Program-made: the position numbers and the translations under genes
Notes under the pieces: generated by a model
What the model was told of the DNA's origin: nothing
What the model saw: the letters and a program-made list of their open reading frames with translations, nothing else
Database searches by the model: none
Assembly: GCA_965202585.1 (NCBI GenBank)
Contig: OZ241830.1
Span: forward strand, 76,136,001 to 76,200,000
Reading direction: 5' to 3'
DNA from: Thalia democratica
Taxonomy: Eukaryota
Length of the DNA stretch: 64,000 nucleotides
Shown here: positions 1-47,200 of the stretch, piece after piece
Position numbering within the stretch: the first letter of the stretch is position 1
Layout: the number at the start of each line of letters is the position of its first letter

Positions 1-1385
1 AGAAAAATGAACAAGTTTTATATTTAAATAAATGCAATTGAATTACTCTTATAAACTCTTGTTTAAAAATTGTGAAATTTTCAATAAATATTACCAGATA
101 CGTTTACTTGCAACAACTAAATAAAAGCTGTCTATACTTAAGCAGTAACTTGCTTAATTAGAATTTATTATATTCAAAAATTCTACACTAGAATGTCACC
201 AACTTATAGTAACTTTAAAAAAATACAACTTGTTTAAACAAATAAACTCAGCACTAAAATAAACAACATAAATACTAAAGCATAAACAAAAATAATTTCA
301 CTTCATTTTTAACAACAAAAACAAAAAGCACTACAGCCTATTAAATTTTACGACTAAAATAATTCATTGCAAAACCAAAATTTTTAATAAACAAAAAAAA
401 AACAAATGAAAAATTAATTGAACTTAAATGACATCATGCTCAATTAACCTACTAATTGTTTCTTTATAACATTTTTCTTAAAATTTAAACAAATTAACTA
501 AGTATAATTCTAACTGTAAAACAAATGTTTCTTAAAAAGTGTTTCGATTTGTACATTTAAAATATATATTAGTTTTTATCTTTTAATTAAAAACTGTGTT
601 AAGATATCGACTTAGCTCATGACTTTTTTTAAATAGTTTGTTTAACATTCACCTATAACTTCTAAATTGTTTAAAATTACTACAACGAAAATAACTATCA
701 TAGGTATAAGTCGTAGTTATAAAGTTTTAAAGTAATTTGTATAATTAGTATACAACAAAACGAACTATAAAATATTAATAAAGAAATTTCAAAATAAATA
801 CAACAAAATCATCAAAAGAAAACTTAGATTTTTTTTTATTTGCTTTTCTATAATGTTTTCAAGTGGTACAAAAAATGCGGTTATCATTCTTTTAAATATT
901 AATTATTCATCAGTTATGAGATAGTTTTTAACATTCGCAGTTACTTCAAAAGCAGTCTAAAAAGTTATTTCAAAGCAAAATTTTTAAGTTTTGTAATATT
1001 TTTTGTACTGATCTTATATTTTTATTCATTTAAATGAGCTTTATAAAAATAGAGTTCTTATAACAGTGTGAAAAACTTTTATATAACATAAATTTTTAAA
1101 ACAAAAACCTGTACGAATATTTATACCTAAAATATTAGATAAATAAACAAATGTCTAAAATAAAGTTACTAAGAAAATGCATCGACTGTTTATTCAGAAA
1201 AAAAAACTTGTAAACAAACTTTATAGTTCAATTAAGTGTGTTCTAATAAAAGATTATTTGATATCACTTTTAATATCAAATAAATGTTACTTAATTAAGT
1301 AATAAAAAGATTTTATAAAATATCATAATTGAATTAAAGTTATAGTCGTCAATGTAGATTTTCATTAAAAACAAGTTGTAATCTC

Positions 1386-1687
1386 TAGGGGTAAGCAAAC
1401 TGCGCCCAGCAAAAATCGATGTACGTTTCAGCTAAAAACATATAATTCTAAAACTTCTTTTTAAATGTAGTAAAGTTTTAAAATAAGCTCACACTTAAAT
1501 AATTAGTAATTGACAGTGTTTATTTTTCTACATTCTATCACGTGTTGTGTTAAAAGCAGCGTTTTACAATTAGTTGCTGCAATTATTTTGAATTACTACG
1601 GCCAACATAACAGAACACTTTATACAAAGTAAAGTCAGGAAGACTTTTTCGAAAAATTCCTTATTGATAAAAGTTTGCCGAACCCTG
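1386..1687. mobile_element. Old hAT/Charlie-like MITE
   Basis: Left end taggggtaagcaaact versus reverse complement of the right end cagggttcggcaaact. A truncated homologue sits at ~12296-12545 in unit B. No clear TSD. Confidence 0.5.
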
Positions 1688-4647
1688 TTATAAAATCAGT
1701 AAAACTAACCTTAATTAAAATTGTTAAATAAAAATAAGCTGTTTAAACATAAACACTTTAAAGTTGCTTTAATTTTTAAGATTTTATTAAAGCTAAAGTT
1801 TACTAAAAAAGACTCTAAGTAATTTAAAATTAGTTATTAAACTAAGCATTATAATGAACAATATTAACTCTTAAGTACTAAGATTACATTAAAAAACTAA
1901 AATCAACTAAAAAAGTGATTTTATAAAGCTTATTGAATTTTAAAACATGTAGCCACTTATTAAACTTACAAAAAAAGTCTGAAATAATGCTTAGATATCT
2001 TATGACTGCAATATAAAGCCTAATCACGAGTTCTGTAATGTCAAATTTAACTGAATTAGAAAACTTAATCAGAAGGTTTTACTATATTTTCAGATGACAA
2101 CTAATTGACTGATAAAAACAACTGCGATCAAAAATAATTGAACTATAAAAGTTTGTCACAAGATTTTATATTTTTTATTTTATTTTTAGGTCACAATTAA
2201 TTGAACTATAAAATTTAATCACGAGTTTTTTTTGTCGTCTACAAAAAAGTTGTTATTTTATCAGCAATACTTAAGATGGAAAGGTATTACGAAATATGCT
2301 GACTTTAAGATTTTTTTCTTAAATAATTTTCCACATGTTTCTTTGTTCGGATTAGTCTATAATTTTACTTTAAAAAAGTTTTCTCGTTGTTACCTGAAAG
2401 TGTTATTGCTATCAGTAAATAAAAAATTAATGTTGATAAACTAAAATCCTTTTCATGTTACTTACAAGCATTGTTTTTAAGTGTAAATGTGTAAATATGT
2501 CTGTTGATATATTGAGCTGCACAACAAAGAAAAAATGTTTATTTTATACGTGGCTTTGGTTGACCTAACAAAACAAAAAACAATTAGTAAGTTAACTAAC
2601 ATCGGTTTTATTGTACCTTACATTATTAGTTTGTAATCTTTCTATTTAATTTAGTTTATAGGCTAATTAGATATGATTTCTTTTTATGAGGTTTTATGAG
2701 GCTATTGGAGATTTTTTTTTTTTTACTAGTCTATCGACTAAAACCATTCTCTTATTTCGATGTTAAGTGTTGTGATTTCTCATTTTTAAGTTATTTGCAA
2801 AATCAGAAAATATTTTTTATAAATAGACTAGTATGATAAATTAATCTCAAATGGCATCATGAAAAGTTTTGTGAATACTTATTTTTATCATTGAAAAAAT
2901 AAATAAATTTAAAAACATGATACAGCTAACATTTAGTTAAAAATGAAGTTTTACGAACATTATTTGATCGTGTTTTTTGTACATGAAATTAAATCTTAGT
3001 TTTTATTTGTTAGTAGCTTATTCTAACTACAAGTATCTTAACAAAAACTATTTAATTTTTTTTATTATTTATTCTTTTATAACTTGCTGTTTATTAAAAA
3101 GTTTTTTTAACAGTTTTATTAATTTTCTTCTTTTACACTTTAGAAATACTTAAACTTTTTATAAGCGAAATAAAGAACAACTTATTTTGTTATTTTGAAA
3201 ATGACAGAAGTTAGTATAGTTAAAAAAACTAAAACTTATAGAGCTAAACTAATTGTTGTTTTTTGAAAATATTTTACAAAACTTAAAAACACTATCTGTT
3301 ATTTGAAATTTATCGCTTGTTTTAAAAAATAAAAATCAAAGTTATTATTTATGAAATACATTGACGTAGAAAAGAGTAAGTTTTTAAGTTTAAATATGAT
3401 AATAATAATGTGGTAATTAAATATTTTATTTACTACCAAGTTTACATTTATATTTCAGTAAGTCGAACAATGTTTTTTATTTATTTTTCAATCATATACG
3501 TGTAAACTATAAACATAAATTTTGTTTTCAACTTTTTTGTTAAGTGTTCAGCTTTACAAATATTTGTTTAATACTTTACAACTGCATATTTAGAGTAAAC
3601 TTTTATATATGACGTTTATTTAGTACATACTATAATTTTTATTAAACTTTTATAACAGTAAAAAGTTTTAAGATTCTAAAAAAATAAAAAACAATTTTTA
3701 AATAGCTTAAAGAAGTGAAATATTTTGTTATGCAAAAGCAAGTTTAGAAAAGCTAGGATAGGTTTTATTAACGAAAAGATTTTTTTTAAATAACAATGAA
3801 CTATATGTCACCAGAAACTTTAATAATTTTTTTTCAGTTGAAGTTTTCAGTTAATGTTTGTTTTTAGTTAAACTTAAATAACTTTACATTAATAAAGGAT
3901 CAATTGGTAGGTTAATCAAGTTCGGGTTTACTTTTTATTTGAATAAAATTTCTATTACTTGTTAATTGTTTTATTGAGTTGATCTGCATTCATTGTACTT
4001 CAGTTTAAGAAGTATTTTAATTTAAAGTTACGTAATGTGTATTTTAAATATAAAAATTATTATACAGTATTTAATTTTTGCTACTAAATCGTCATACTTT
4101 TGATTTTTTTCATGCAAAATAAATTAACAAAGTTTTTGCAAAAGTCTGATTAAAACAGTTTGTATGTTACACCAAACGAGAAATCAATTAACCAATATAT
4201 CACTAACTTAACACATTTACATTCAAATTGTTACCAACGATAAAATTAAAGAAAACCGCAAGATTAAAATCGTTGTTGGCTAAACCCACTTTTTCTATTT
4301 AATTTTTTTAGTTGTTTTGTAGTTACATTAAGTTTATTACTTTTCTTAAACAAAACCTATAGAATTTACATCAAAAAATAAGTATTTTTCCTAATGTTTT
4401 TATACATTTCAAAATAAATTTATATCAAAATCGTTCTTTAGTTGTTCAGTATTTTAAAGGTTTAAACAAACTGCTTGTTAAGACTTCTTTTAATTCAAAC
4501 GTTATTATTGTTTATATACTAAATTCGTTCAGTAAAATTGACTAAAACTTTTAGCTGTAGTTTAAATATAAAATGTTAAACAAATTTGAAGAGACAGTTT
4601 TTTGACGAAATTCAGATCAATTACGAGAAAGTTAGAACGATAAACAA

Positions 4648-5412
4648 TTAGTTCGCTTCGGTGCTCGATCGCTCAATTTGCTTTTTTAAACTTTCTAGCA
4701 TAACTTCTGAATTTCTTTTTAAATCATCATCTAATTCTTGCAAGTGAGAAATACCATTATCATAAGCCTCTTTGGCGATGGATAGATCATCGGGCGAATC
4801 AAGATAGTAGTGTATTTCAGAAAGGTTCCGTGCAATTAAAAGTCTAGTTAAGTCAGCTGGGCTTTTATTTTCCTTCGCTAATTTAAACGCTTCTTCAAAA
4901 AGTTCTTTTGCTTTTTTGACATTATCATCAACATCTTCATCGTCATCATCTCTTTTATCATCTACTTCGTCATCTACTTCGTCATCAACTTTGTCATCTT
5001 CTTCGTCTTGTTCATCGTCTTTTAGAGCAAAAAATGCTTTTTCCAAATAGCAAAAAGCTTTGAAAGCCTTATAGTCAACAACGGCTTTGGGGTTATCATC
5101 TCTTTTTATCCAATAACTTTCAATTAGTTCTATAAATTCGTCACATATTTTGGCATGTTTCGACTTTATTTTATCTATTACTTCCAAACGCAGGTGATTT
5201 ACAACACTCACGCGTTTCAAAGAATCAAAACACTCTGAAAAATTATTTTTTATACGATTGTAATTTAAGTATAACAACCATCTTTCATTGTAATTTAAAG
5301 GAGTTGCCATTTTGATTACTTGCTTAATATAGTCAATTGAATCACTGTAGAGACCTATAACATGTGTCAAGTCTGCCAGAGATATTAGTTCTTTTCTATC
5401 AAAATATGACAT
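4648..5412 (-). CDS. Divergent 14-3-3-like protein, copy 1 (254 aa, acidic loop insertion)
   Basis: ORF 4648-5490; likely start is MSYFDRK at 5412, matching the paralogs. It aligns by eye to the 14-3-3 fold: DRKELISLA (zeta DKNELVQKA), PLNYNERWLL (ELSNEERNLL), FEEAFKLAKE (YQEAFEISKK), SIAKEAYD (SLAKTAFD). No coding introns. Confidence 0.88.
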   Translation of the reverse strand: MSYFDRKELISLADLTHVIGLYSDSIDYIKQVIKMATPLNYNERWLLYLNYNRIKNNFSECFDSLKRVSVVNHLRLEVIDKIKSKHAKICDEFIELIESYWIKRDDNPKAVVDYKAFKAFCYLEKAFFALKDDEQDEEDDKVDDEVDDEVDDKRDDDDEDVDDNVKKAKELFEEAFKLAKENKSPADLTRLLIARNLSEIHYYLDSPDDLSIAKEAYDNGISHLQELDDDLKRNSEVMLESLKKQIERSSTEAN

Positions 5413-5994
5413 TTTAACAAATCTGAAAAACACGTAAAACACGATTTTTTTGTTGTTCTTCAGAAATTTTTTTAACTTCTTAATAAACATATAAAAGTCA
5501 TGGCATGTTACATTTTAAAGATAATGAAGAACTAGCAAAAAATTCACAGGCTGTAAACAATTAAAAGTTTAATTGATTTTATGTTATCTTTATCTTTTTA
5601 ATAGTTTTCAAAACGTTAATGGATCGTTTTATTAGTCTGCACAAATAAAGTCAAAAAATTTAAAAAAAGAATATTAATTTTTTTTACAAACTTTTTGTTA
5701 AATAAGGTTGTAAAATGCTAAAGTAAACACTGTAGAAAGTATTCTTGAAATCCACTTTTTTAACAATATAAAACCTATTGCATTACTTACTGTTGAAGCT
5801 AGTCAAGTTATTTAAAATTATTTTGAAAACAAAAACAGAAGCTTTAGTTAAAAATTTTAATGTTGAAAGTAGTGAAACATAAATTCAAAGTTTTAGATTA
5901 AAATAAACTTTTTGACAGTTAGACTTCAAAAGTGTTTTAATATTTACACAAGTGGTAAAAACTCTAAAAAATAAACAAAACTTAAATTTAATGC

Positions 5995-6118
5995 CATGAC
6001 CTATAGGAGTTGAAATTTTAATAACTTGCTTCATATTTTCAATTGAGTCGTTGTAGAAATCTATACCATGTGATATTTTTGCAAGACACGTCACATATTT
6101 TCTGTCAAGTTCTGACAT
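5995..6118 (-). pseudogene. N-terminal remnant of a 14-3-3-like gene
   Basis: MSELDRKYVTCLAKISHGIDFYNDSIENMKQVIKISTP matches the first two helices of the intact copies. Similarity then stops abruptly. Confidence 0.75.
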
Positions 6119-7183
6119 TACAAATATTCTAAAATTAAGCATACTAATTACTTTTTGTTATTTGTAATATAGTTTATTACCTTTCTGATTAATTTTACGA
6201 AGTTTAAACACATTTAAATACCCTTATCTTGCATGATATAACAATATTATAAAACAGTTTTTAAACAACTTTTAATATAATTTCAAGATTTAAACAAGTC
6301 TATGTACATTAATTGTTTAAATAATTTAAAAGTATTAGTTAAATATATTGTAGTATGCATAAAACGTTTTTAATGGTTTACACGATAGTTTTAAAAGTTA
6401 TGGTTTGTTACATGTTGTTTTTTAAAAGTAAATTGTAACAGTAATTGTCAAAAGAACTGTTGTTAGTTATAATTTCAAATGGCCATGAAAACTTAATTAA
6501 TAAGAAATTATGTTAAAAAAAATAAAAACAAAACTATTATTTTTAAGATAACATTTAACAAAAAAATTTCAACTTTGAACTTCTATTTTTAAAGTATATC
6601 AAAAAATGAAAACCGATTTCGATTTTTACAACTCACATTTACTCAAAGTGGTTTGTTTTATTAATCAATTAGAACTAATTAGAATTTACAATTTTTTTCA
6701 AATTTTAATATGCTAAAAACCGGCACTTTTTACAAAATATTTAGAGAAAGCTTCTTTTTAGCAGATTTTGTTTTTGATAAAAGAAATTTCAAAAACAATC
6801 AAAATCTTACTAAGTTGAACACCGAACTCACTTTACCAGTTAGACATTTATTTTTCATTTTGTTATTTAAAATTAATTTAGTTTATCTGAAATAAAACAC
6901 TGTAACTTACAGTTAAAAAAACCTAGTTTTTTCAAAGTTTTTGTAGACTTTGTAGCATAATTTAAAGCTAATTTTTTTTAAATGTAAAATATTTTGAAGG
7001 TTTGCTGAAATTTTTTGTTAAGAGATTTTCAAAGTTAAAAATATTCTTAGTTATTTTTTATTAACCTCATGACTCAGCTAATTACAAACTTATAAAAAAT
7101 ACGGTTAAAATCATTTTCCAAAAAACTGGTATACGACAAAGTTATAATTAATTTTATAAAAGTTAAAAACAAAGTCTACTGGT

Positions 7184-7867
7184 TTAGTTTTGCTTAAAGC
7201 TCCATCTTTCAATATTCTTTCTTAACTTAAACAGATCAGAATTTCGTGAAATTTTAAAGTCGTCGTATATTTCATGTACTGCACTCTCATAAGCCCCCTT
7301 TGCAATGGAAATAGCTTCATCTGGTGAGTCGAGGATGTCACCGTATATTTCAGAAAAATACCTTGCAGTTGTGAGTCTGACATGATCATCTGGCTTCAAA
7401 AACTCTTCCACTATTTTCTGTGCTTCTTCAAATGCCTCTATTGCTTTTCTGACGTCTTCACTATCTCCTTTTATCCCACTAAAAACCAACTTGTTGTAAT
7501 GCTGATAGACTTTGAAATGATTGTAGTCAACAACAGATTCAGGGTTTTTGTCTCTTTTTACCCAATAACTGTCGAGTAATTCTAATGAATCATCGCATAT
7601 TTTGTTATGTTTCATATTAATTTTATCTACTAATTGTGAACGGAGGCTTTCTTTAACATTTTCTTTGTCCAATAGTTTCAAACGAATTTTGTCAAGATTT
7701 CTTCTCATACGAATATAACAGGTAAACAATAAATATCTTTCATCCTTGTTTAAAGGAGTTGACATTTTAATTACTAGCTTCCAATAGTCAATTGAATCGT
7801 TGAAGAGACCCAATTCCATACAAATTTTTGCCAGAGAAACTAGATCTTTTCTATCAAAATCTGACAT
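7184..7867 (-). CDS. Divergent 14-3-3-like protein, copy 2 (227 aa, no acidic insertion)
   Basis: ORF 7184-7888; likely start MSDFDRKDLVSLA at 7867. Motifs PLNKDERYLL, FEEAQKIVEEFLKPDDHVRL, ILDSPDEAISIAKGAYESA and LRKNIERWS correspond to 14-3-3 helices C, F, G, H and I. Confidence 0.88.
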   Translation of the reverse strand: MSDFDRKDLVSLAKICMELGLFNDSIDYWKLVIKMSTPLNKDERYLLFTCYIRMRRNLDKIRLKLLDKENVKESLRSQLVDKINMKHNKICDDSLELLDSYWVKRDKNPESVVDYNHFKVYQHYNKLVFSGIKGDSEDVRKAIEAFEEAQKIVEEFLKPDDHVRLTTARYFSEIYGDILDSPDEAISIAKGAYESAVHEIYDDFKISRNSDLFKLRKNIERWSFKQN

Positions 7868-10800
7868 TATAAAATTTCTGAAAAACATGTAAACTAGTTA
7901 TTTTTTTTGCTATTTGTTATACACTTAATCACCTTTCTTTTAATTTTTTTAAAATTAAACAATCTAACTTTATCATAAACATTATGAAGGCACTGTAAAA
8001 ATTCTAAAATATAAAACAAACAATAAACAACTTTGAAATTATCTTAAGGTTTAAATCATTTTGTGCAAACTTAATACCTTTAATAATTTAAAGTTTACTA
8101 TTTTTGTTATCGGGTTTGCATAAATAAATTGTCACAGTTTTAAAATATAGTCGTATAAATTTAAATTTTAGACAAGTTGTTTTACTACATTATGTTAGAA
8201 TAGTATATGTACGGAGTATTTTTGTAAGTTATAATTTTAAATAATAAAAATGTTCGTGCAAAATTTCTAAGTAATAAAAATAAAAATAAAAAATTGATTT
8301 TACTGAATTGAATTGCTAAACAGTTTTCAACGTTCTATTTTACAAACAATGTCTACAATTGATTTTCTAGACAACTAAAACTTTAGATAAAAACAATTAT
8401 GTTTTTTACTATTTACATTCTTCTTAAAAATTAAGACAGTGTTTCAATTCTTGTAATTTACTTTTTTAACAGAATAAAACCTATCGCATTATATATTTTG
8501 AAGCTTTAAAAGTAAATAAAATTATTTTGAGAACAAAAACAGACACTTAAGTTAAAAATTTACAATCTTGAAAGTAGAAAAACATAAATTGAAAGTTTTA
8601 TATGAAAATACACTTTTTAACAGTTCAAATTTAAGAATTATTTTCATATTTACACTACTGTAAATAACTCTAACTTACAAACAAGACTAAGATTTTATTT
8701 AAATAAAACTTATTACTTTATTTTTTAGATGAAACCAAGTTTAATTTAATGTAAAATTAAATGTAAAAATTCAAAGTTTGTATATTTAAAACACTAGTTT
8801 TCAAATATGTTATTTAGCTTGCAAAAGAAAATCTATTTTAACTTTAACACTAGCTGTTATATGTTTGTACTTAAGTTTTTTTTTAAGTTAAAAAATTAAG
8901 AAAATTAAAAAATATTGAAGCTCATTCAAAACATCATAAAAAATTGAATTTTAGTTTACCTGTTAAACTCATCTAAAACATGTTCATAGTTATATTAAAA
9001 TAACAGCTTATTAGAAAAACCTAAATTTAAAAAATGTAAGTGATAAACAACAATGAACTCAATCAAGATAAAACTGCTTTTTTTTTTTATTACATCAAAC
9101 AACACTAAAAAACAAAAAAAGTTAATGTTCTCGTTCTCTCTTTAAAAAAAAGTTGATTATCAATAACTGAATAAAGTTTTTTATATTTGCAGTGACTTAA
9201 AAATATATTTATACTAGTTTTAGATTTTGTAATATTAATTTTACTAGACACAGATAACATTCTTTCTAGAAAAAAAGTTTTGAAAGTAAAATAATATATA
9301 TACAAACAATTTTTACTGTGTCAACATCATTTTGAGTTTTATAAAACAACTTGTTTTTAGAGATTCTAGACAAGAGAAGTAAAATGTAAAAAATAACCTA
9401 CTGCTACTAACAATAAACGTCGGTTTGTTATACAACAAAACACTAATCAACAAACTTTATAGTTAAATTAAGTGTATTTTGGAAAGAAAAAGTACTTGAG
9501 AATAATTTTTATATTTGAATCAAATGTAGTATAATAAAAAACTAAAAATTATGATAAAGTTAAATGAATAAATTGAAATATTGTAAAAATAGTATGTAAT
9601 AAAACGTCTTTAATTCTTAACTAAATTATTTTACAAAAAATAAAAGTGTCTAATTAAAAGTATTAACTATTAGATGCTTTTACTGAAAGATGTTCTGAAA
9701 AAAACCTTAAGTAACTTCTAAAAACTTATTAAACTCCCTATTAAAATGGTAGCATTAACAATATATGAAGAGCTAAAACTAAATTGAAAATTAAAATCTT
9801 TTGAAGCTTACTGATTTTGAACGTATATTTTCAAAAAAACAAGCAAATTAAAAGAATAAGAAACAAGTTTAAGGTTGAAACGAAAGTTGATCGAACTCAA
9901 TCGACCCAATTATTGTTCCTTTATTACATGTTATTCTCAGAATGTTAAGGTTATTCAGTTCACAAGAAAACAAAAGAATATGTTTTTGAATAAAGGAAAC
10001 AGTCTACTTTAGTTTTACTTTAATTATAAAAGTGTGCTTTAAGGTTGTAACCTTATTAAATGTCTGTTAAAATTTTAGTGTTTTTTTAAATATAGCTAAA
10101 GTAAGTCCAAAAACAAAATATTTTAAGTACTACTTAGAACATTGCTAAAATAAATTTTTAAATAGGTTAATTCAAGTTTATTTTTAAATTTTTGTTTAAT
10201 AATGTTTCTTGCAGTTTTACTGTTATAGTGTTACAAATTAGATCTATAAACATTTTTTTTCAAGTCTATATTATTTTTTGAGATATACCATCTTAAACAT
10301 TAATTAAATAATTTGAGTTGTCGAAATTTCCATTACTCTTATTTGAATTGTCACGTTACTGAAACTTATACAAAACCAAATTAAATCACTTTATATACAA
10401 CTACATAATTTTTTTTTAACTTGTAAATATATCGTCTTTTAATGTATAAAGTATATATTTAGTAATTAAATTATAGTGTTTTACTAAATTTTGTTTTTAT
10501 GTAACTATTTTAAAGTTCTGCAAAACTTTAAAGAATTTTATTTTAGTTAACTGTTGCATGAATGCAAGTTTTCTTAATGTTATTCTAATCACTGTAGTTT
10601 GATATGATTATAAATAAATATTAAAAGACTCATTCACATCTATTAAAAAAAATAGTTTGATTTAAGACAAAAAATGTTTTTAACTATTATACTTAAGTGA
10701 CTTTAAAATATGGCTAAAAACTAAGCAAGGTTAATTTAAGATTAAAGAAAAAAAACATGTTGGAAAACTTTTAATTACAATTAACTGATTTTATCAAATG

Positions 10801-12894
10801 TAATTTAAAAGTTAGTAAAGGGTTTTAAGACTTTATATAGTTTATTAAAAATGCTTAACGTTCTACTAAGTGCGGAATAAAAGCTATTTAAACTTAAATA
10901 CAAGCTTACTGTTTTTATTCTATTTAAGTTTAAGTAAAAAAAAAAAAAGTTTATGTTGGTGAAACTCATTTAAAACAACTATTTTTTAAATAACTTTTTT
11001 AACAACTTATTTTGAAAATAAACACAGTTAAATGCATAAGATGATAACTTAGTATGAGATAAAGAGCTTAACTAAGTGTTTATTAAAGCTATCCTCTCAA
11101 ACTAGGTATAACAAATATTTTTTTTGTATCTTATCAAAACTAAGCTTATCAGTAGTCATGGGCAAATTGTCTCGTTCACAGTTACTTAAAAACATGTTTA
11201 GTATGCTGTTATTTCAAGTTTTGTAAGATGTTTTTATTAATAACTATTAGTATTACCTACCTTAAAAAATAGTAGAAAACACTAAATTAAAAAAGCATTA
11301 TACCAACAAAGATATTTTAATTGAAACAGCTGTTCTAAAGGTTAAGGTTAAATCTAATAGCTCAAACGGAGACAAATATATGTTAAAAGACTACTAACAA
11401 AATAACATCATAGAAGTACTTGTATTAAAATTTTGTATTTCATTTCAGTTAACCACGTATAACTCATCAGATGACTATGTAGTCAGATTAAGTTTAATGT
11501 AATTAATCTATAGAAATATTTAAAAGTTTTAAATTTGAGTAAAATGCAATTGAATTACTGTTACACACTTTTGTTTAAAAGTTGTGCAATTTTCAATAAA
11601 TATTTCTAGATATGTTTACTTGCAAATACTAAATAAAAGCTGTCTATACTTAAGTAGTAACTTGCTTAATTAGAATTTATCAAATTCAAAAATGCTACAC
11701 TAAAATGTCACCAAGTTATAGTAACTGTAAAAAACTACAACTTATTTAAACAAATAAACTCAGCATTGAAAAAAACAACATAAATACTAAAGCATCAACA
11801 AAAATCATTTCACTTCATTTTTAACAATATAGAACAAAAAACACTACAGACTATTAAATTTTACGACTAAAATAATTCATTGCAAAACAAAATAATTTAA
11901 TAAACTAAATAAAACAAATGAAAAATTAAATGAACTTAAATAACATCATGCTCAATTAACCTACTAATTGTTTCTTTATTACGTTTTTCTCAAACTTTAA
12001 ATAAATTCACTAATATAGTTCTAACTGTATAAAAATGTTTCTTTAAAAGTTTTATTTAAAACATATATTAATTTTTAGCTTTTAATTAAAAACGAGTGTT
12101 TTAAAACATCGCTTCGGTTGTTTATTTAAAACACAAAACTTGTAAACAAACTTTACAGTTCAATTAAGTTTATTCTATTAAAAAACTACTTCATACTGAA
12201 TTTTGATATCAATTTAAATGTTACTTAATTAAGTAATAAAAACGCGTATCAAAAGTTTTATTTTAATTTAAATTAATGACTTCAATGTAGATCTTCAGCT
12301 AAAAACATATAACTCTAAATAATTTGTTTTAATGTAGTAAAGTTTTACAACAAGCTCTCAATTTATTCATTATTAACTGACAGTGTTTGCGTTTCTACAT
12401 TTATCACGTGTTGTGTTCAAAGCAATATTTTACAATTAGTTGCTGCAATTATTTTAAATTACTGCGGCCAACATAAACTTTTTTAAAAGTAAAGCCCGGA
12501 TTTTTTTTGTAATTCGTTACTTATGAAAAGTGCCGAGCCATGTTGTAAACTGATAAAAACTAACCTCTATAGTAACATATTAGATAAAAGAAAGCTGTTT
12601 AAACTTAAGTGTAGTTTAATTTTCTAGTTTTTTCAAGCTAAAGTTTACTTAAATACTCTAAGTAACTTTATATTAAAAGTTCAAACATTATTAGCTTTTA
12701 TTTAAATGCATAACCGATATAAAACACTCTCTTCTATCACAGAAAAGCTTCTATCTCTCTTCTATCACATTAGTTACTAAACTCAGCATTCAAAAGGACG
12801 ATAAAAACACTTCAGTACTAAAATGAAGTAAACTCTTACTCAAGTATTAAAACTACATTAATTAAATTAAAAATAACTGATAAAAGTAATTGTG

Positions 12895-13045
12895 ACCAAA
12901 AATAATTGAACTATAAAAGTTTGTCAGGAGATTTTTAATTTATTTTTAGGTCACAATTAATTGAACTATAAAAGTTTGCCACGAGATTTTTATTTCATTT
13001 TTATGTCACAATTAATTGAACTATAAAATTTAATCACGAGTTTTT
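12895..13045 (+). repeat. ~58-bp tandem repeat (3 copies here, 2 copies at ~2130-2230)
   Basis: The unit aattgaactataaaa...gtcacaatt recurs, with different copy number in the two segmental duplicates. Confidence 0.7.
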
Positions 13046-15255
13046 TTTTTGTATTTTCACAAATATAATGTTGTTATTTTATTAGCAATACTCAAGATGA
13101 AAAGTTATTTCAAAGTATGCTGACTTTAAGTTATTTTTCTTAAATAAGTTTCCATGTTTTTTTGTTTAACTTAGTCTTTAATTTTACTTAAAAGCATTAT
13201 TCTCATTATTTTCTGAAAGTGTTAATGCTATCAGTGAATAAAAAACAAATGTTGCAAAAATAAATCCTTTTTTCACCTTATTATCTAGCATCGTTTTTAA
13301 GTAGGTGTAAAAGTTAAATAAGTCTGTTAATAAATGTAGCTGCAAAACAAAAAACAAAAGTGTTTTATTTATACAAAGCTTTGATTAACTTAACAAAACA
13401 AAAACAATTAGTAAGTTAACTTACATCGGTGTAATTGTACTTTACATTTATAAGTTTGTAATTTTTTTATTTAATTTAGTTTATAGGCTATTTTGGTATG
13501 TTTTCTTTTTATGAGGATTTATTAGGCTATTTGAGATTTTTTTATACTAGTTTATTTATTAAAACTATATTTTTTTATTTTGAAGCATAGTTTTGTGATT
13601 ACTTATTTTTAACTTTGAAAGAATCAATAAATTTAAAAACATGATATAGCTAACATTTAGTTAAAAATGAAGATTGACCAACAGTATTTGATTGTGTTTT
13701 TTTAAATGAAATTAAATCGTATTTTTTATTAATTAGTAGCTTATTCTAAATACAAGTATCTTAAAGAAAGCTATCTAATTTTTACATATTTATTCTATTA
13801 CAACTTACTGTTTATAAAATATAATTTTAAAACGTTTTAATAACTTTCTATTCTTACACTTTAGAATGATAAAAAATACTTTTATTTTTTTTAAACGAAA
13901 TAAAGCAACAACTTATTTTGTTTTTTCAAAAATAACTTAAATTAAAATAGTTAAGAACTATTATAGCTAAACAAACTAATCTTTATTTGAAAATATTCTA
14001 TAAAAGTTAAAAAAAAATTATCTACTATTTGAAATTTATCGCTTGTTTTAAAACATAAAAGTCAAAATTATAATTTAAGGTATACATTGACGTAGAGAAA
14101 ATTAAGCTTTTAATATAAAACAATAAAGTAGAAACTTAATATTCTATTTACTACCAGGTTTACGTTTACATTTCAGTAAATTGAGCAATGTTTTTTATTT
14201 AAGACAATTAACTATATAAATGTAGACAATATAGAAAAAAAATAGTTTTCAAATATTTTTTTTGTGTTAAGCTTTACAACTCTTCGTTTAATACTGTACA
14301 GCTACATATAAAGTACATTTTTATAAATGACGTTTATTTACTATAGAATTGATTTTTTATTAATTTTTAACAACAGTAAAATATTTTAAGTTCTACAAAA
14401 ACAAGAAAAATATTTAAATAAAATAATGTTTTTTCAGCTGAAAAGTTAATGTTTGTTCTTAGTTGAACTTAAATTACTTTATATTAATAAAGGAACAACT
14501 GTTTGGTTAATCAAGTTCGGTGTTTACTTTTTATTTAAGTAAAACTTTTCTTACTTTTTAATTGTTTTATTAAGTTGATCTGCATTCATTGTACTTCAGT
14601 TTAAGAAGTATTTTTAAAGTTACGTAACGTGTATTTTGAATATAAAAATTATTAAATAGTATTTAATTTTTAAGACTAAATTATCATTCTTTTGCTTTCT
14701 TTCATTCAAAATAAATTAAGAAAGATGTTGCAAAAGTTTAATTCAAAAAGTTTGTATGTACATCAAACGAGAAATAATTTAACTATTATATCACTAACAC
14801 ATTTACATTCAATTTAGTACGAACGTTAAAATCAAAGAAAACCGCAAGGTTAAAAACGTTAGATAATGCTTAACCAACTTAACCTATTAAATGTTTTTTA
14901 AACTGTTTCGAGTCAAATTAAGTTTAATATTTGCTTTAAACAAAATCAATAAAATTTAGATCAAAAATAAAATATTTTTCTTAATGTTTTTATACATTTC
15001 ACAATAAATTTATGTCAAAATTGTTTTTTAGCTGTGCAGTATTTTGAAGGTTTAAACAAACTACTTGTTAAGACTTCTTTTAATTAAAACGTTATTATTG
15101 TTTATATACTCAATTTTGTTTAGTAAGATTAAATATAATTTTTAGCTGTAGCTTAAACATAAAATGTTAAACAAATTTGAAAAGACAATTTTTTTAAGAC
15201 TTCTTAGTTAAGACAAAACAAAGATCAACTATGAGACAATTAGAATGAAAAACAA

Positions 15256-16020
15256 CTAATTATCTTCACTGCTCGATCGCTCAATTTGCTTTTTTAAACT
15301 TTCCAGTACAACTTCTGAATCACTTTTTAAATCATCATCTAATTCATGAAAGTGAGAAATTCCATTATCATAAGCTTCTTTGGCGATGGATAGATCATCG
15401 GGCGAATCAAGATAGTAGTGTATTTCAGAAAGGTGCATTGCAATAGAAAGTCTAATAAAGTCAGCTGGGCTTAAATTTTCCTTAGCTAATTTAAACGCTT
15501 CTTCAAAAAGTTCTTTTGATTTTTTGACATTATCATCAACATCTTCATCGTCATCATCTTCTTGGTCATCTACTTCGTCATCTTCTGCTTCATCTTCTTC
15601 TTCGTCTGCTTCGTCTTCTTCATCGTCTTCTAAAGCAAAAAATGCTTTTTTCAAATAGCAAAAAGCTTTGAAAGCCTTATAATCAACAACGGCTTTGGGG
15701 TTATCATCTCTTTTTATCCAATAACTTTCAATAAGTTCGATAAATTCGTCACATATTTTGGCATGTTTTGACTTTAATTTTTCTTTTAAATACAAACGCA
15801 GGTGATTTTCAACACTCACGCGTTTCAAAGAATTAAAACACTCTGAAAAATGATTTTTCATACGACTGTAACTTAAGTGTACCAACCATCTTTCGTCACA
15901 ATTTAAAGGAGTTGCCATTTTGATTACTTGCTTCATATAGTCGATTGAATCACTGTAGAGACCTACATCAAGTGACAAATTTGCCAGAGATACTAGTTCT
16001 TTTCTATCAAAATGTGACAT
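15256..16020 (-). CDS. Divergent 14-3-3-like protein, copy 3 (254 aa, acidic loop insertion)
   Basis: Intact ORF of the same length as copy 1 and its close paralog. The two share an identical 41-aa stretch, KSKHAKICDEF...KAFCYL. Confidence 0.88.
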   Translation of the reverse strand: MSHFDRKELVSLANLSLDVGLYSDSIDYMKQVIKMATPLNCDERWLVHLSYSRMKNHFSECFNSLKRVSVENHLRLYLKEKLKSKHAKICDEFIELIESYWIKRDDNPKAVVDYKAFKAFCYLKKAFFALEDDEEDEADEEEDEAEDDEVDDQEDDDDEDVDDNVKKSKELFEEAFKLAKENLSPADFIRLSIAMHLSEIHYYLDSPDDLSIAKEAYDNGISHFHELDDDLKSDSEVVLESLKKQIERSSSEDN

Positions 16021-16384
16021 TATAACAAATCTAAAAAAACTTAAAAACTGTTTTTTTTTGTTGTTTATCAGAATTTTTTTTAACTTCTTAATAAATATAT
16101 TAAAGTCATGTCATATAATATTTTATAGATAATGAAAAACTAGCAAACTTTTTTACAGTCAGTTAATAAATAACTAAAAGTTTATTTTAGTTTATGTTTA
16201 ATTACCATTTTAATTATTTAAAAAAAATTATAAATCGTTTTATTAGTCTGCACAAAAAAAACTCTATAAATGTGAAATAAAATATTTATTTTATTATTGA
16301 TAGCCTTTTTGTAAAATAAGGTTGTAAAATACTAAATTCAACACTGTAGAAAGTACTAACATATACACTAAATTACTAAAGTTG

Positions 16385-44200: not shown

Positions 44201-47200
44201 CAACCCATTCGGACAGATGATGCAACCCCAAATAGTCCCTCAACCGTTTTACGTGGTCCCGCCTTCGACCAGCCTGGTCACACCTGTAACTACCAAGTTT
44301 GTTTTAATTACTTATATACAATGAAATATTTTAGCGGTTTTTATATGATAGTTGTGCGTAGTTTAGTTCAGTTCGATCTTTTAACTTTTTTACTATTGTT
44401 ACATTTTTGCGTTTTAAACCGATTTTAATATGTTTCATGTAAATAAAACTGTTTTTATAATTGTTAATAATTATACTAAATCACATATATAATCATATTT
44501 TAGAGAACAGCCAAAGATTTTACTCTTGTAAATAGAGCTTAAATTTTTAAAGCAAATAATACTAATTTTACTGTTCTAATTACTTAAGTGTTTTATTGGT
44601 GCATTCATTTAGAATTTAAAACCTAGTTTTCCTGTATTTTTCCAGCTTGGAAGTTCATTACAAAACATTGATAAAAAATTCAAAGTTTAAACTCAACTAA
44701 AACATTTTACTAAACTTTAGATAGCTATTATCAAGTTTTACATTCAAATAACGTGAAAAGTTAATGGTACCGAATAAAAGTATATTAAGTGTCTTGCATA
44801 TATAAATTGTGTACTCTGTTTAGAAAAACTAATTATTATTACTACTTGATAGATAGCACGTAGTATTTATAAATTCAAGAAGTTCGCCATTGTCTGTTAT
44901 TTGCAATTTTTAATTGTCTTTTGATCTTACTGTGTACCTATTGTCTTCTACCACACATATTTCGGTGTGTTGGTCAGCAGTGTGCATTTTTTGGAGCCTT
45001 GTGACAATAGAACTAAAAAAACTTTTGAATAACAGGAGCACTACTAAAGCAACTGAATCAACACCGATCACAACTACAGAAGAGAGAACGACTAACTTTC
45101 TTGATGCAATTAATTTAGGTAAGACTGATGTTGCTTATTTATCTGGACTTAATAACCAATCGTAAGTTCTTGAAACTAAGTAAGCATTAAAATTGTAGTT
45201 TTTACTTTAGAAAATGCACAAAAGCTTTGAAACATTTCAAGCAATTAAGCTCTAGCTTTTATAACCGAGACAAAGTATCTTATAATATAAGTTAAAAAAA
45301 GTATACCTGAAAATACACGAAAAAATTTAGTAGATAAAGTTAATTTGAGATTAGTATTTGAAAACCTAAAAAAGAGTTGTCAAGGCAATCATAATAAAAA
45401 GATACAAGTGTAAAAAACACTTAAGATATAGCATTTTTGTTCGTTTATTATTGTACCTTATTAAAGTATCATATCGTTTAATAGATCAAAACCTAACACT
45501 ACAGCGGACCGCAAATCCATCAAAAAAGGCCTGAATACCTAAAACTATTAAATAATAACTTGATAGTTGTCTTTAACATCTTACATATTTTATTATCAAT
45601 GTAGTTATGAAAATCTACAGCGGACTACAGAGCTATCAAGAAAGGACCGGAGTACCTGAAACTGACCAACGCGTTGTACGAGACTCACGACATAGCGGTT
45701 GTCAGTTGTCAGGCTATGGACAGGAAACTGTGCAGTTTGAAGGAGCTGCAGGTAAAAAAGTTCTACTATATCTAAAACATTTATATATAGAGAAATAATT
45801 AATTTAAGATAAATAAACTTTTGCCTGGAACATTTGTTTCTGCATCGAAACGCTTTCATCAGCTAAGTGTTTTGTTTGATGTTACACAAAAATAAATTTC
45901 GCCCTTCCTAAGCAGGCACAAAATAAATATAATGATAGATGTATTTAAACATTTTTATACAATTTTTTCTCAGTACGCGCTTACTGTGGAGCACGTGATA
46001 CCCGACACCGTGTGGGGATGGTACGAAGTTGGGGGGAGGGCGGCCAAGCTGGAGAGTTGTGTGCCAGGTTAGCCAAGTAGAATTATAATTATCAATATTG
46101 CGTCGGGTAATATGATTTTGAATGTTTTAATAAGTAAAAGTTTATAAAAAGTAAAGTTTAGTGAAACGGATGAAGGTTTTGAGGATTGAAATAAAGTATA
46201 TTTGTGTTAAACTAATAATATCTTTGGCTTAAAAATAAAATAAGTTAAAAGTAGCAGTTTTTGGAGAAAAGTATGATTTGCTAAAAAGTATAAAAAGTAA
46301 ATTTTTCTGAATTTGATAAAGACTTTCTGATTTAAAAGTAATTACAAAACTTCATTTTCAATAGCTTTAACTCAAGTTAAGCAACTTTGCTTAATTAACT
46401 ATAAAATATTGTTCTATCATTTTTTATTATTATTATATTGTTTATTGTGCAATGTTGGACTCAGGCATCAAAACCTGAGCCACTTAAACAGGACACACAA
46501 AAAGAGAAAAAGAAAATAAACTTATATTCAAAACTTTAAGATAAATTATACATATATATATATACAAACATAATTTAAATGGAAACACAAAGTTAAACAC
46601 AATATGATAAACAAATGAACTAAATTGAAAATTCAGTTCAAAAAATTCAAATTTATAATTTGCTTAGTACACACAGTAAAGAAGTTTGTCTAAAATCATG
46701 GCTTATAAAACAATATTCATAAATACAAAATATATAAGTAAACTAATAGTTTGTAGGGGGGAGGCGTAGGGAAACGAATATTTTTCCTTTTGTTACAGTG
46801 GAAAATTAGTTAATTTTACTGGTATTTATCGTATTTAAGTCAAATCTTTTTAGCTTTAAACGAAATTGTTCTACCCTCTCACAAGATACTATATCCTGAG
46901 GTAGTCTGTTCCACATAGCTTTTGCTCTGTGAAAAAATGCGCCTTGCCACTGACTGTTTTGAAAATCATGTTTACATTTTATTTTCAAATTATTTCCTCT
47001 TAGTTGATATTTATTTTGGGAAAAATTAAAAAACTGGTCAAAAAAACTTTTATATTTGCCATTGATAATTTTGTAAAGAATTAATAAATCAAATTCCCAT
47101 CTTCTATATTCCAGTGATTTCAATCCAAATTTAATCATTCTATCATTATATGACGTGTAAGATATGTTGCAACGATTACAAATATGACGGGTAAAACTCC

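What the first reader, a model, noticed from the sequence alone, without database searches (positions are those of the whole stretch)
4648..16020. A family of 14-3-3-like proteins that has lost the entire phosphate-binding tetrad
Seen: in a by-eye alignment to 14-3-3 zeta, K49/R56/R127/Y128 become N/S/L/E (copy 1), I/D/Y/N (copy 2) and S/S/L/K (copy 3). The helical scaffold and ORF length are nevertheless preserved in three copies. Established: these four residues bind pSer/pThr and are nearly invariant across eukaryotic 14-3-3s. Inference: these are pseudo-14-3-3 adaptors with a repurposed, phosphorylation-independent groove, or dominant-negative dimer partners of canonical 14-3-3. Caveat: all three have Arg at position 50 and Lys/Arg at position 52, which might rebuild a shifted basic patch.
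Basis: partly seen in the sequence, partly recalled or inferred. Interest (0 to 1): 0.82.

Follow-up and report, generated by a model that had tools for sequence, protein, structure and literature searches.

The report
Phosphate-blind 14-3-3 gene family, tunicate
Three intronless genes in this window belong to a family of roughly a hundred or more 14-3-3-derived genes in a probable open-ocean tunicate; they keep the 14-3-3 fold and probably its dimer, but have lost all four phosphate-binding residues, and their binding groove now changes freely from copy to copy.

Summary
The three minus-strand ORFs (4648-5490, 7184-7888, 15256-16020) match Pfam 14-3-3 well above its cut-off. Two of them were folded and give confident nine-helix 14-3-3 models.

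The scale is much larger than three copies. The genome gives 150 scored 14-3-3 matches, mostly intronless genes of about 225 codons in head-to-tail arrays on several chromosomes. About a third of the full-length copies carry stop codons. Almost all copies examined lack the tetrad, while the genome also keeps canonical 14-3-3 genes.

Selection is inverted relative to normal 14-3-3s. Thirty groove-lining sites evolve at omega 1.13, against 0.38 for the rest of the protein. A homodimer through the canonical interface is predicted.

Outside this genome, relatives were found only in unnamed Tara Oceans marine contigs. I found no description in the literature.

No RNA data could be obtained, so expression and ligands are unknown.

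My best reading is a set of phosphorylation-independent dimeric clamps with copy-specific grooves. A functionless groove is not excluded.

An earlier first-stage note on this window (s1-311499) made a related point about copies 1 and 3.

The parts
4648..5412 (-). Copy 1: intronless 14-3-3-like gene of 254 codons, counted from the family-consensus Met (the open frame runs on upstream to 5490). Tetrad positions are N/S/L/E.
   Evidence: (PF00244, 61 bits).
4903..5019 (-). Asp/Glu-rich insert in the loop between helices E and F of copy 1 (residues 132-170).
   Evidence: It splits the Pfam match in two. The equivalent stretch in copy 3 is modelled with low confidence.
7184..7867 (-). Copy 2: intronless 14-3-3-like gene of 227 codons, counted from the consensus Met (the open frame runs on upstream to 7888). 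Tetrad positions are I/D/Y/N.
   Evidence: (76 bits, one stretch covering 1-222 of 223 profile positions); AlphaFold2 pLDDT 94.2; Foldseek top hits are 14-3-3 beta, sigma and zeta with TM 0.72-0.80.
7868..7888 (-). Upstream in-frame ATG followed by a TTTTTCAG motif that looks like a splice acceptor, 13 nt before the consensus start of copy 2. It is probably 5' UTR or an acceptor site rather than coding sequence.
   Evidence: Sequence read; family consensus start. The splice reading is inference only.
15256..16020 (-). Copy 3: intronless 14-3-3-like gene of 254 codons. Tetrad positions are S/S/L/K.
   Evidence: (66.5 bits); AlphaFold2 pLDDT 87.3 and pTM 0.82.
15532..15630 (-). Asp/Glu-rich insert of copy 3 (residues 131-163), predicted to be disordered.
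   Evidence: pLDDT is 55-60 over residues 131-160.
1..5741 (.). First copy of a duplicated segment that carries copy 1. It is homologous to 11512-16355.
   Evidence: Self-BLAST: colinear blocks at 77-87% identity.
11512..16355 (.). Second copy of the duplicated segment, carrying copy 3.

Best explanation
The three ORFs are functional, intronless members of a large lineage-specific family derived from 14-3-3. The family is tandemly amplified, with copies being born and lost. Its members keep the nine-helix 14-3-3 scaffold and most likely still form the canonical N-terminal dimer.

They can no longer read phosphoserine or phosphothreonine in the canonical way. All four phosphate ligands and the conserved backbone-binding Asn/Lys/Glu residues are replaced. 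Constraint on the concave groove has been lifted, so the groove walls differ from copy to copy, while the hydrophobic core, the loops and the dimer contacts remain under purifying selection.

The mechanism I think most likely is inferred, not shown. Each copy would be a phosphorylation-independent dimeric clamp whose individual groove recognises its own ligand, with the repertoire renewed by duplication and loss.

Shown here: homology, fold, loss of the tetrad, family size and organisation, and the selection pattern.
Inferred: dimerisation, any ligand binding, and expression.
For: Homology and fold:
- PF00244 is matched above cut-off.
- The family profile matches 14-3-3 zeta at E = 1.5e-38.
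- AlphaFold2 gives pLDDT 94.2 for copy 2 and 87.3 for copy 3.
- Foldseek top hits are all 14-3-3.

Loss of the tetrad and of other groove contacts:
- It holds in nearly all of 59 copies and in relatives from metagenomes.

Family size and organisation:
- The genome gives 150 scored PF00244 matches, clustered on C1, C2, C4 and C6. The window's array holds at least 9 copies, all on the minus strand.
- By my hand count, about 41 full-length hits are intact and about 21 carry stops.
- Homology extends more than 1.4 kb into both flanks, so growth was by segmental or tandem duplication.

Selection:
- Over sister pairs, omega is 0.53 overall, 0.82 for the groove and 0.47 for the rest (bootstrap P = 0.002).
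- With an ML codon model on 48 genes, omega is 1.13 for the groove and 0.38 for the rest.
- Sites that are the most variable in canonical 14-3-3s give only 0.48, and 162 random 30-site sets reach at most 0.51.
- Groove omega = 0.5 is rejected (2dlnL = 46.5). Omega = 1 is not rejected (2dlnL = 1.0).
- In my site-by-site test, 70 sites are under negative selection and only one of them is in the groove.
- 14 of the 30 most variable sites between sister copies are groove sites (p = 8e-7).
- Against an orthologue on a Tara contig, omega is 0.26-0.41.

Dimer:
- D21 and K85 are nearly invariant, and positions 18 and 89 co-vary: R-E in 18 copies, L-K in 10, Q-A in 5.
- The homodimer model scores 0.68 against 0.34 for the best of 3 controls. 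That mark was reached by 21 of 30 proteins solved as pairs of one chain and 0 of 23 solved as single chains (microbes), and on eukaryotes by 17 of 29 and 0 of 30.
- The three runs agree in at least 96% of contacts, and the partner's pLDDT is at least 90.
- The interface covers residues 4-24 and 61-82 and includes the contact 24:82, which corresponds to D21:K85.
Against: - No RNA or protein evidence. No RNA run was on record. The two runs that hold the locus cover genes and spacers alike, so they are DNA. A third run from the same sample holds nothing of it.
- A groove omega of about 1 is exactly what a functionless groove would show. No single site passes multiple-test correction for positive selection.
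- The 30-site groove list comes from my knowledge of 14-3-3 zeta and sigma structures, not from coordinates. I had already seen family entropies for 25 of those sites before computing omega.
- Gene conversion between tandem copies, AT-biased codon usage, a FastTree topology and my own implementation of the site test could all distort omega.
- The dimer prediction may be recalled from solved 14-3-3 dimers.
- About a third of the copies are broken, so some intact ones may be decaying as well.
Confidence: 0.5

Rival explanations
1. The groove has no function, and the proteins act through what is still conserved: the N-terminal dimerisation surface and the scaffold. They might sequester or heterodimerise with each other or with canonical 14-3-3. 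This includes the reader's dominant-negative idea, in which a dimer with one dead groove cannot clamp doubly phosphorylated clients.
For: Groove omega is not distinguishable from 1. The strongest purifying selection falls on helices B and C, the D-E junction and the F-G loop. D21 and K85 are conserved, and a canonical-type dimer is predicted.
Against: A purely dimer-based role does not obviously need on the order of a hundred copies. In sister pairs, helices A and B are less constrained than the rest of the protein (omega 0.66 against 0.47). In the window's clade R18 has become L and E89 has become K, so a heterodimer with the canonical protein would lose one salt bridge and place canonical R18 opposite K89 (inference). 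A few groove-floor positions are conserved in a family-specific form (S45 to F, F117 to D, M121 to F), which is unexpected for a completely abandoned groove.
Confidence: 0.2
2. The copies are mostly non-functional. They would be by-products of segmental amplification in a repeat-rich, duplication-prone genome, and are decaying slowly.
For: About a third of the full-length copies carry stops. Some very recent pairs have dN/dS near 1, for example copy 2 against L030 at 1.1. No expression evidence was found.
Against: Open frames of 227-254 codons at 25% GC are wildly improbable without selection. Omega is 0.38 over 195 non-groove codons, with 69 of those sites individually under negative selection. 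dN is mostly well below flank divergence. Orthologues are kept open in a different species found in Tara samples, at omega 0.26-0.41. The buried-site periodicity is preserved.
Confidence: 0.1
3. The proteins still bind phosphorylated or acidic ligands, through a shifted basic patch rebuilt from other residues. Candidates are R50 and K/R52 in all three copies, R53 in copy 2, R172 in copies 1 and 2, and the family-conserved K119, K/R122 and K129.
For: R50 and K/R52 are present in all three copies. Position 52 is basic in 33 of 48 family members. K119 (43 of 48) and K129 (37 of 48) are family-specific conserved lysines on helix E.
Against: Position 52 is not detectably constrained (beta/alpha about 0.75, p = 0.76). 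Positions 50, 53 and 172 vary freely across the family. N173 and N224, which hold the peptide backbone in canonical complexes, are not kept. I could not obtain model coordinates or electrostatics, so I do not know where K119, K122 and K129 point.
Confidence: 0.08

Closest known systems
Canonical 14-3-3 proteins (Pfam PF00244), for example human zeta, beta and epsilon, and this genome's own epsilon-like gene (L001, G000:C2:31.71 Mb)
   Same: Homologous over the full length. Same nine-helix fold and about the same length. Core residues are shared (E40, R41, Y48, Y118, K85, P162, P165). A canonical-type dimer interface is predicted.
   Different: About 24-27% identity to the canonical protein. 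K49, R56, R127 and Y128 are all replaced, and K120, N173, E180 and N224 are not conserved. The groove is the fastest-evolving part instead of the most conserved. There is no acidic C-terminal tail. The genes are intronless and amplified into large tandem arrays.
Divergent 14-3-3 isoforms with partly substituted binding residues (unnamed representatives in the 50%-identity protein library; from my memory, also protist isoforms such as those of Cryptosporidium and Plasmodium)
   Same: They carry PF00244 and have substitutions within the tetrad.
   Different: Among 60 canonical-like sequences aligned (59 library representatives plus this genome's own L001), 41 keep K/R/R/Y. One other is a partial sequence with gaps at these positions. 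The remaining 18 changed one to three positions, with one exception: P0049 has lost all four, and it belongs to this same tunicate family. None of them is known as a hundred-copy family.
14-3-3-like domains of SMG5, SMG6 and SMG7 (from my memory, not tested here)
   Same: A 14-3-3-type helical domain reused outside classical 14-3-3 signalling. I recall that some members lack the phosphate-binding residues.
   Different: Those are N-terminal domains of large multi-domain NMD factors, ancient and low in copy number. These are stand-alone proteins of about 225 residues that match PF00244 itself.
Nematode cluster of hypothetical proteins carrying PF00244 and/or DUF7758 (ESM Atlas)
   Same: Another lineage-restricted, divergent group resembling 14-3-3.
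   Different: It surfaced only by language-model similarity (0.90). The window proteins do not match DUF7758 in Pfam. No relationship was tested.

Membership tests
14-3-3 (Pfam PF00244) by homology | Significant match to the family profile over its full length | tested here: met
   61, 76.3 and 66.5 bits against a cut-off of 33.2. Copy 2 covers profile positions 1-222 of 223. The family HMM matches PDB 14-3-3 zeta at E = 1.5e-38.
14-3-3 (Pfam PF00244) by homology | Nine antiparallel helices forming a cup-shaped monomer | tested here: met
   AlphaFold2 gives pLDDT 94.2 for copy 2 and 87.3 for copy 3, with the expected series of helices. The 50 best Foldseek PDB hits are all 14-3-3, with TM 0.70-0.80. 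Copy 1 was not folded; it is 81% identical to copy 3.
Functional 14-3-3 phospho-reader | Phosphate-binding tetrad K49/R56/R127/Y128 | tested here: not met
   N/S/L/E, I/D/Y/N and S/S/L/K in the three copies. The tetrad is absent family-wide, with entropy of 2.8-3.4 bits at these four columns.
Functional 14-3-3 phospho-reader | Conserved amphipathic groove: K120, N173, N224 and E180 as peptide contacts, and L172, V176, L216 and L220 as the hydrophobic wall | tested here: not met
   These columns have 2.8-3.6 bits of entropy. Omega is 1.13 for the 30 groove sites against 0.38 elsewhere.
Functional 14-3-3 phospho-reader | Dimer through helix A of one subunit against helices C and D of the other | tested here: inconclusive
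   D21 and K85 are nearly invariant, and positions 18 and 89 co-vary. The homodimer model scores 0.68 against 0.34 for the best control and uses the canonical interface, but this may be recalled from solved dimers.
Functional 14-3-3 phospho-reader | Binding of pSer/pThr mode-1, mode-2 or mode-3 peptides | not testable with these tools
   Needs FP or ITC with recombinant protein.

The most novel reading that the evidence does not exclude
The family is a germline-encoded repertoire of intracellular binders built on the 14-3-3 clamp. A conserved dimeric scaffold would present a hypervariable concave surface, diversified by birth-and-death evolution under conflict, for example recognition of viral, parasite or selfish-element proteins. 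This would parallel the variable concave faces of LRR- or TPR-type immune receptors, and would be the first 14-3-3 scaffold used in this way.
Probability: 0.2. Interest if true: 0.85.

Novelty: new variant of a known kind. Interest (0 to 1): 0.62.

Why it matters
14-3-3 proteins are among the most conserved eukaryotic signalling adaptors, and their phosphopeptide groove is their most invariant part. This family shows the opposite pattern. The scaffold and the dimer contacts are conserved, every phosphate ligand is gone, and the groove evolves at the neutral rate or faster, across copies numbering in the order of a hundred.

If the proteins are expressed, they form a natural experiment in what a 14-3-3 clamp can do without phosphorylation. 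They also form a ready-made library of groove variants on one scaffold, and possibly a new kind of diversified recognition family in a chordate.

The case also warns annotators. An automatic '14-3-3' label on these genes would wrongly imply phospho-dependent signalling.

Tried and rejected
- Single-sequence phmmer alignment of copy 2 to PDB 14-3-3s. It suggested that R56 and Y128 were retained. I rejected it because the family MAFFT alignment, the family HMM and the anchored helix registers all disagree.
- Expression. Two run searches found no RNA run. Laying contigs showed that X1 and X2 cover genes and spacers alike, so they are DNA. X3, from another organism, and X5 gave only matches of about 20-40 nt. 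There is no verdict on expression.
- Exact-protein look-ups for copies 2 and 3 found nothing on record.
- A 922-bp JGI contig brackets an orthologue of a different subfamily, but it is colinear with metagenome DNA and has no poly(A) tail or leader. I could not verify the sample type, so it is not used as expression evidence.
- Retrocopy or transposon-cargo origin of the array. I rejected it as the current mode of spread: homology runs on for more than 1.4 kb on both sides at similar identity, and the window's repeat unit holds no other ORF of 100 or more codons. An original retroposition of an intronless founder remains possible.
- A full IQ-TREE codon search timed out. It was replaced by fixed-topology fits.
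- Five literature searches for an expanded or tetrad-less 14-3-3 family in tunicates or elsewhere found nothing relevant. A 2026 comparative tunicate genome paper (PMC13746493) mentions 14-3-3 only once; that passage was not among those I read, and the passages shown did not mention this family.
Full report
**What is in the window**

The window (G000:C6:76136001-76200000) has about 25% GC. It holds only four ORFs of 150 or more codons. With a stop-codon frequency of 0.087, a 227-codon open frame has a chance of about 9e-10 per start, or about 1e-4 for the window. These are therefore not chance ORFs.

Each ORF matches Pfam 14-3-3 (PF00244) above the 33.2-bit cut-off, at 61, 76.3 and 66.5 bits. 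Copy 2 matches in one stretch over profile positions 1-222 of 223. Copies 1 and 3 match in two stretches, split by an Asp/Glu-rich insert.

AlphaFold2, run with a 43-sequence family alignment, gives pLDDT 94.2 and pTM 0.88 for copy 2, and pLDDT 87.3 and pTM 0.82 for copy 3. Both show the expected series of helices. The acidic insert of copy 3 (residues about 131-160) has pLDDT 55-60, so it is probably a disordered loop. Copy 1 was not folded; it is 81% identical to copy 3. The 50 best Foldseek matches of the copy 2 model in the PDB are all 14-3-3 proteins, with TM 0.70-0.80.

**Is the tetrad really gone?**

I tested this in three ways.

- A MAFFT L-INS-i alignment of 59 family ORFs with the genome's own canonical 14-3-3 is ungapped through both relevant helices.
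- An HMM built from 42 family members without the canonical protein aligns to human 14-3-3 zeta and beta (E about 1e-38). Helix E is ungapped from Y118 to G135, which puts variable, non-basic family columns at R127 and Y128.
- The registers are anchored. In helix E the residues E113, Y118, A130, A133, S/T134 and G135 have identical spacing in the family and in canonical proteins. In helix C the invariant E40, R41 and Y48 directly precede positions 49-56 on a helix predicted to be continuous. The alternation of conserved buried sites and variable groove-facing sites in helices C, E, G and I coincides with the canonical faces.

A single-sequence phmmer alignment of copy 2 moved gaps so that R56 and Y128 appeared to be retained. 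It is the outlier and I reject it.

R50 and K/R52 are present in all three copies, and position 52 is basic in 33 of 48 family members. That position is not detectably constrained, however.

**Scale and organisation**

A six-frame search of the 802-Mb assembly with PF00244 returned 150 scored matches out of 180 candidates. Most matches exceed the Pfam cut-off.

A few are canonical genes. One is an intronless epsilon-like gene at C2:31.71 Mb (352 bits, tetrad K/R/R/Y). Others are multi-exon loci on C6 at 45.14 Mb and on C9.

The rest are intronless ORFs of about 225 codons, clustered on C1 (93.7-94.8 and 37.3-37.6 Mb), C2 (18.9-19.2 and 73.5-73.7 Mb), C4 (73.3-74.6 Mb) and C6 (71.8 and 76.11-76.15 Mb). 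The window's array has at least nine members, all on the minus strand.

By my hand count of near-full-length hits, about 41 are open and about 21 carry one or more stops. This is a birth-and-death pattern.

Window positions 1-5741 and 11512-16355 are a segmental duplication carrying copies 1 and 3. Across the family, homology continues for more than 1.4 kb on both sides of the ORFs. The arrays therefore grow by segmental or tandem duplication, not by scattering of short retrocopies.

A maximum-likelihood tree shows many deep, well-supported subfamilies that largely follow chromosomal clusters. A Tara Oceans homologue (P0001) nests inside the copy 2 clade, so part of the diversification predates the split from that species.

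**The tetrad and groove across the family**

Among 50 core members, position 49 is mostly Q, S, R, N or I. Position 56 is mostly L, I, E or S. Position 127 is mostly Q, E, Y or H. Position 128 is mostly D, Y or N. The other canonical peptide contacts (K120, L172, N173, V176, E180, L216, I217, L220, N224, W228) have entropies of 2.8-3.6 bits.

The most conserved columns are core and dimer positions: E40, R41, L36, Y48, Y118, K85, D21, K27 and P162. Three groove-floor positions are conserved, but in a family-specific form: S45 to F, F117 to D and M121 to F.

Metagenomic relatives show the same loss.

**Selection**

*Sister pairs.* Pairwise Nei-Gojobori dN/dS is 0.43-0.63 for most within-cluster pairs and 0.26-0.41 against the Tara orthologue. 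Over 21 independent sister pairs, omega is 0.53 overall. It is 0.82 (bootstrap CI 0.54-1.25) for 30 groove-lining sites and 0.47 (0.40-0.54) for the remaining sites outside the groove and helices A-B, with P(groove <= rest) = 0.002. Of the 30 sites that most often differ between sister copies, 14 are groove sites, where about 4 would be expected (p = 8e-7).

*Codon model.* I fitted a GY94+F1X4 maximum-likelihood model on 48 genes, with fixed topology and one scaling factor per site class.

| Site class | Omega |
|---|---|
| 30 groove-lining sites | 1.13 |
| All other sites | 0.38 |
| 40 non-groove sites most variable among canonical 14-3-3s | 0.48 |
| 40 non-groove sites most conserved among canonical 14-3-3s | 0.28 |
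| 162 random 30-site non-groove sets (maximum) | 0.51 |

*Likelihood-ratio tests on the groove.* Omega = 1 is not rejected (2dlnL = 1.0). Omega = 0.5 is rejected (2dlnL = 46.5).

*Site-by-site test.* I wrote my own FEL-type test. It finds 70 sites under negative selection at p < 0.05, and only one of them (position 45) is in the groove. Six sites have beta above alpha at p < 0.1, and four of these are groove sites: V46, D124, E131 and V176 in zeta numbering. None survives correction for multiple tests.

*Flanks as a neutral yardstick.* dN is mostly well below flank divergence, although that comparison is noisy.

*Caveats.* The groove list comes from my knowledge of 14-3-3 structures rather than from coordinates, and I had seen family entropies for most of these sites before computing omega. 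Gene conversion, AT-biased codon usage and the simple codon-frequency model can all bias omega.

**Dimerisation**

D21 and K85 form an inter-subunit salt bridge in canonical dimers (established knowledge). Both are nearly invariant in the family.

The canonical R18-E89 pair co-varies across the family: R-E in 18 sequences, L-K in 10 and Q-A in 5. The window's clade is L-K. The number of independent changes behind this pattern is small.

A homodimer prediction for copy 2 scored 0.68, against 0.34 for the best of 3 controls. That mark was reached by 21 of 30 proteins solved as pairs of one chain and 0 of 23 solved as single chains (microbes), and on eukaryotes by 17 of 29 and 0 of 30. The runs agree in at least 96% of contacts and the partner's pLDDT is at least 90. 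The interface is residues 4-24 against 61-82, which is helix A against helices C and D, and it includes the contact 24:82, the counterpart of D21:K85. Many 14-3-3 dimers have been solved, so this pass may show likeness rather than binding.

**Distribution and prior knowledge**

A word-based search of 5.8 billion proteins found only five relatives of copy 2, all unnamed.

An exhaustive HMM search of 1.84 billion cluster representatives found about 30 proteins that score clearly above canonical 14-3-3s, at 139-319 bits against about 130-135. I looked up ten of the listed hits. The eight from this family come from ENA or JGI marine metagenome assemblies, which are Tara Oceans samples wherever a record was read, and none carries a name. 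The two named high scorers, from Branchiostoma and Polarella, are long proteins that contain an ordinary 14-3-3 domain.

The ESM Atlas's nearest cluster is a 65-member 14-3-3 cluster whose few assigned members are Chordata.

Earlier agents in this scan concluded that the genome is a pelagic tunicate. I did not test that independently, but the marine-plankton relatives fit it.

Five literature searches found no description of such a family.

Among 60 canonical-like sequences aligned (59 library representatives plus the genome's own L001), 41 keep K/R/R/Y and most of the others changed only one to three positions. One is a partial sequence with gaps at these positions. Only P0049 has lost all four, and it belongs to this same family.

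**Expression**

Expression is the main gap. No RNA run is on record. The runs that hold the locus cover genes and spacers evenly, so they are DNA. Another run from the same sample holds nothing of it.

**Interpretation**

These are real genes derived from 14-3-3. They keep the fold and probably the dimer, and they have given up canonical phosphate reading. The groove is the only part of the protein released from purifying selection.

My preferred mechanism is a repertoire of phosphorylation-independent dimeric clamps with copy-specific grooves, at a probability of about 0.5. Three observations favour it: the size and turnover of the family, the family-specific conserved groove floor beneath variable walls, and a groove omega that exceeds even that of the least constrained other surface sites.

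A dead groove, with function residing in dimerisation, is the main rival at about 0.2. Slow decay of non-functional copies stands at about 0.1, and a rebuilt basic pocket at about 0.08.

By homology the genes belong to the 14-3-3 family. They fail the defining functional features of a 14-3-3 phospho-reader.

Noticed in passing
window 4903-5019 and 15532-15630: Copies 1 and 3 carry a 33-39-residue, almost pure Asp/Glu insert in the E-F loop. It is predicted to be disordered, differs between the two copies, and is shorter in their closest relative L032. Canonical 14-3-3s have an acidic C-terminal tail that can occupy the groove; these proteins lack that tail. Whether the loop acts as an internal pseudo-ligand is unknown.
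   Followed up: partly
L047:850-2058 and L048:821-2020 (G000:C2:74.37-74.38 Mb): Two family members are 400-403 residues long: a 14-3-3-like domain (residues 13-220) followed by an extension of about 180 residues with no Pfam match. One search lists further open frames of 388-394 codons at C1:94.82 Mb and C2:18.88 Mb.
   Followed up: partly
G000:C1:94.16 and 94.66 Mb and C2:18.91 Mb (L042, L044, L043): Nearly identical family members lie on two different chromosomes, and the C1 (about 94 Mb) and C2 (about 19 Mb) clusters interleave in the tree. This suggests recent inter-chromosomal segmental duplication, or an assembly artefact.
   Followed up: no
G000:C4:73.3-74.6 Mb (L054, L055, L068), C8:22.84 Mb (L059), C6:71.77-71.83 Mb (L056-L058, L069, L070): Two still more divergent subfamilies match PF00244 only weakly or over part of its length (25-49 bits). 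One of them has F/Y/F/W at the tetrad positions. The family's true size is probably underestimated by the Pfam-based count.
   Followed up: partly
L078 (JGI 3300018893, 922 bp): A short JGI contig tightly brackets an orthologue of the C9:20.42 Mb family member, with 48 nt upstream and 214 nt downstream. It begins one base after an AG in the matching genomic contig. If that sample is a metatranscriptome (I recall that it is but could not verify it), this would be transcript evidence in a related species.
   Followed up: partly
window 7868-7888 (minus strand): A TTTTTCAG motif that looks like a splice acceptor lies 13 nt upstream of the consensus start codon of copy 2. This fits a 5' acceptor site, for trans-splicing or a 5' UTR intron, in a genome that others in this scan judged to be trans-splicing.
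   Followed up: no
G000:C6:76129606-76130217 (just upstream of the window; L053): A copy in the same array carries an in-frame TAA. It is an example of the decaying fraction of the family.
   Followed up: no
window 46806-47819 (minus strand): This is the only other ORF of more than 150 codons in the window (337 codons, TTG start). It lies within a region that other first-stage notes describe as an FG-GAP/Link-like receptor gene. I did not examine it.
   Followed up: no
ESM Atlas: A nematode cluster of hypothetical proteins mixes PF00244 with DUF7758. It may be an independent lineage-specific family of divergent 14-3-3-like proteins and would be worth comparing.
   Followed up: no
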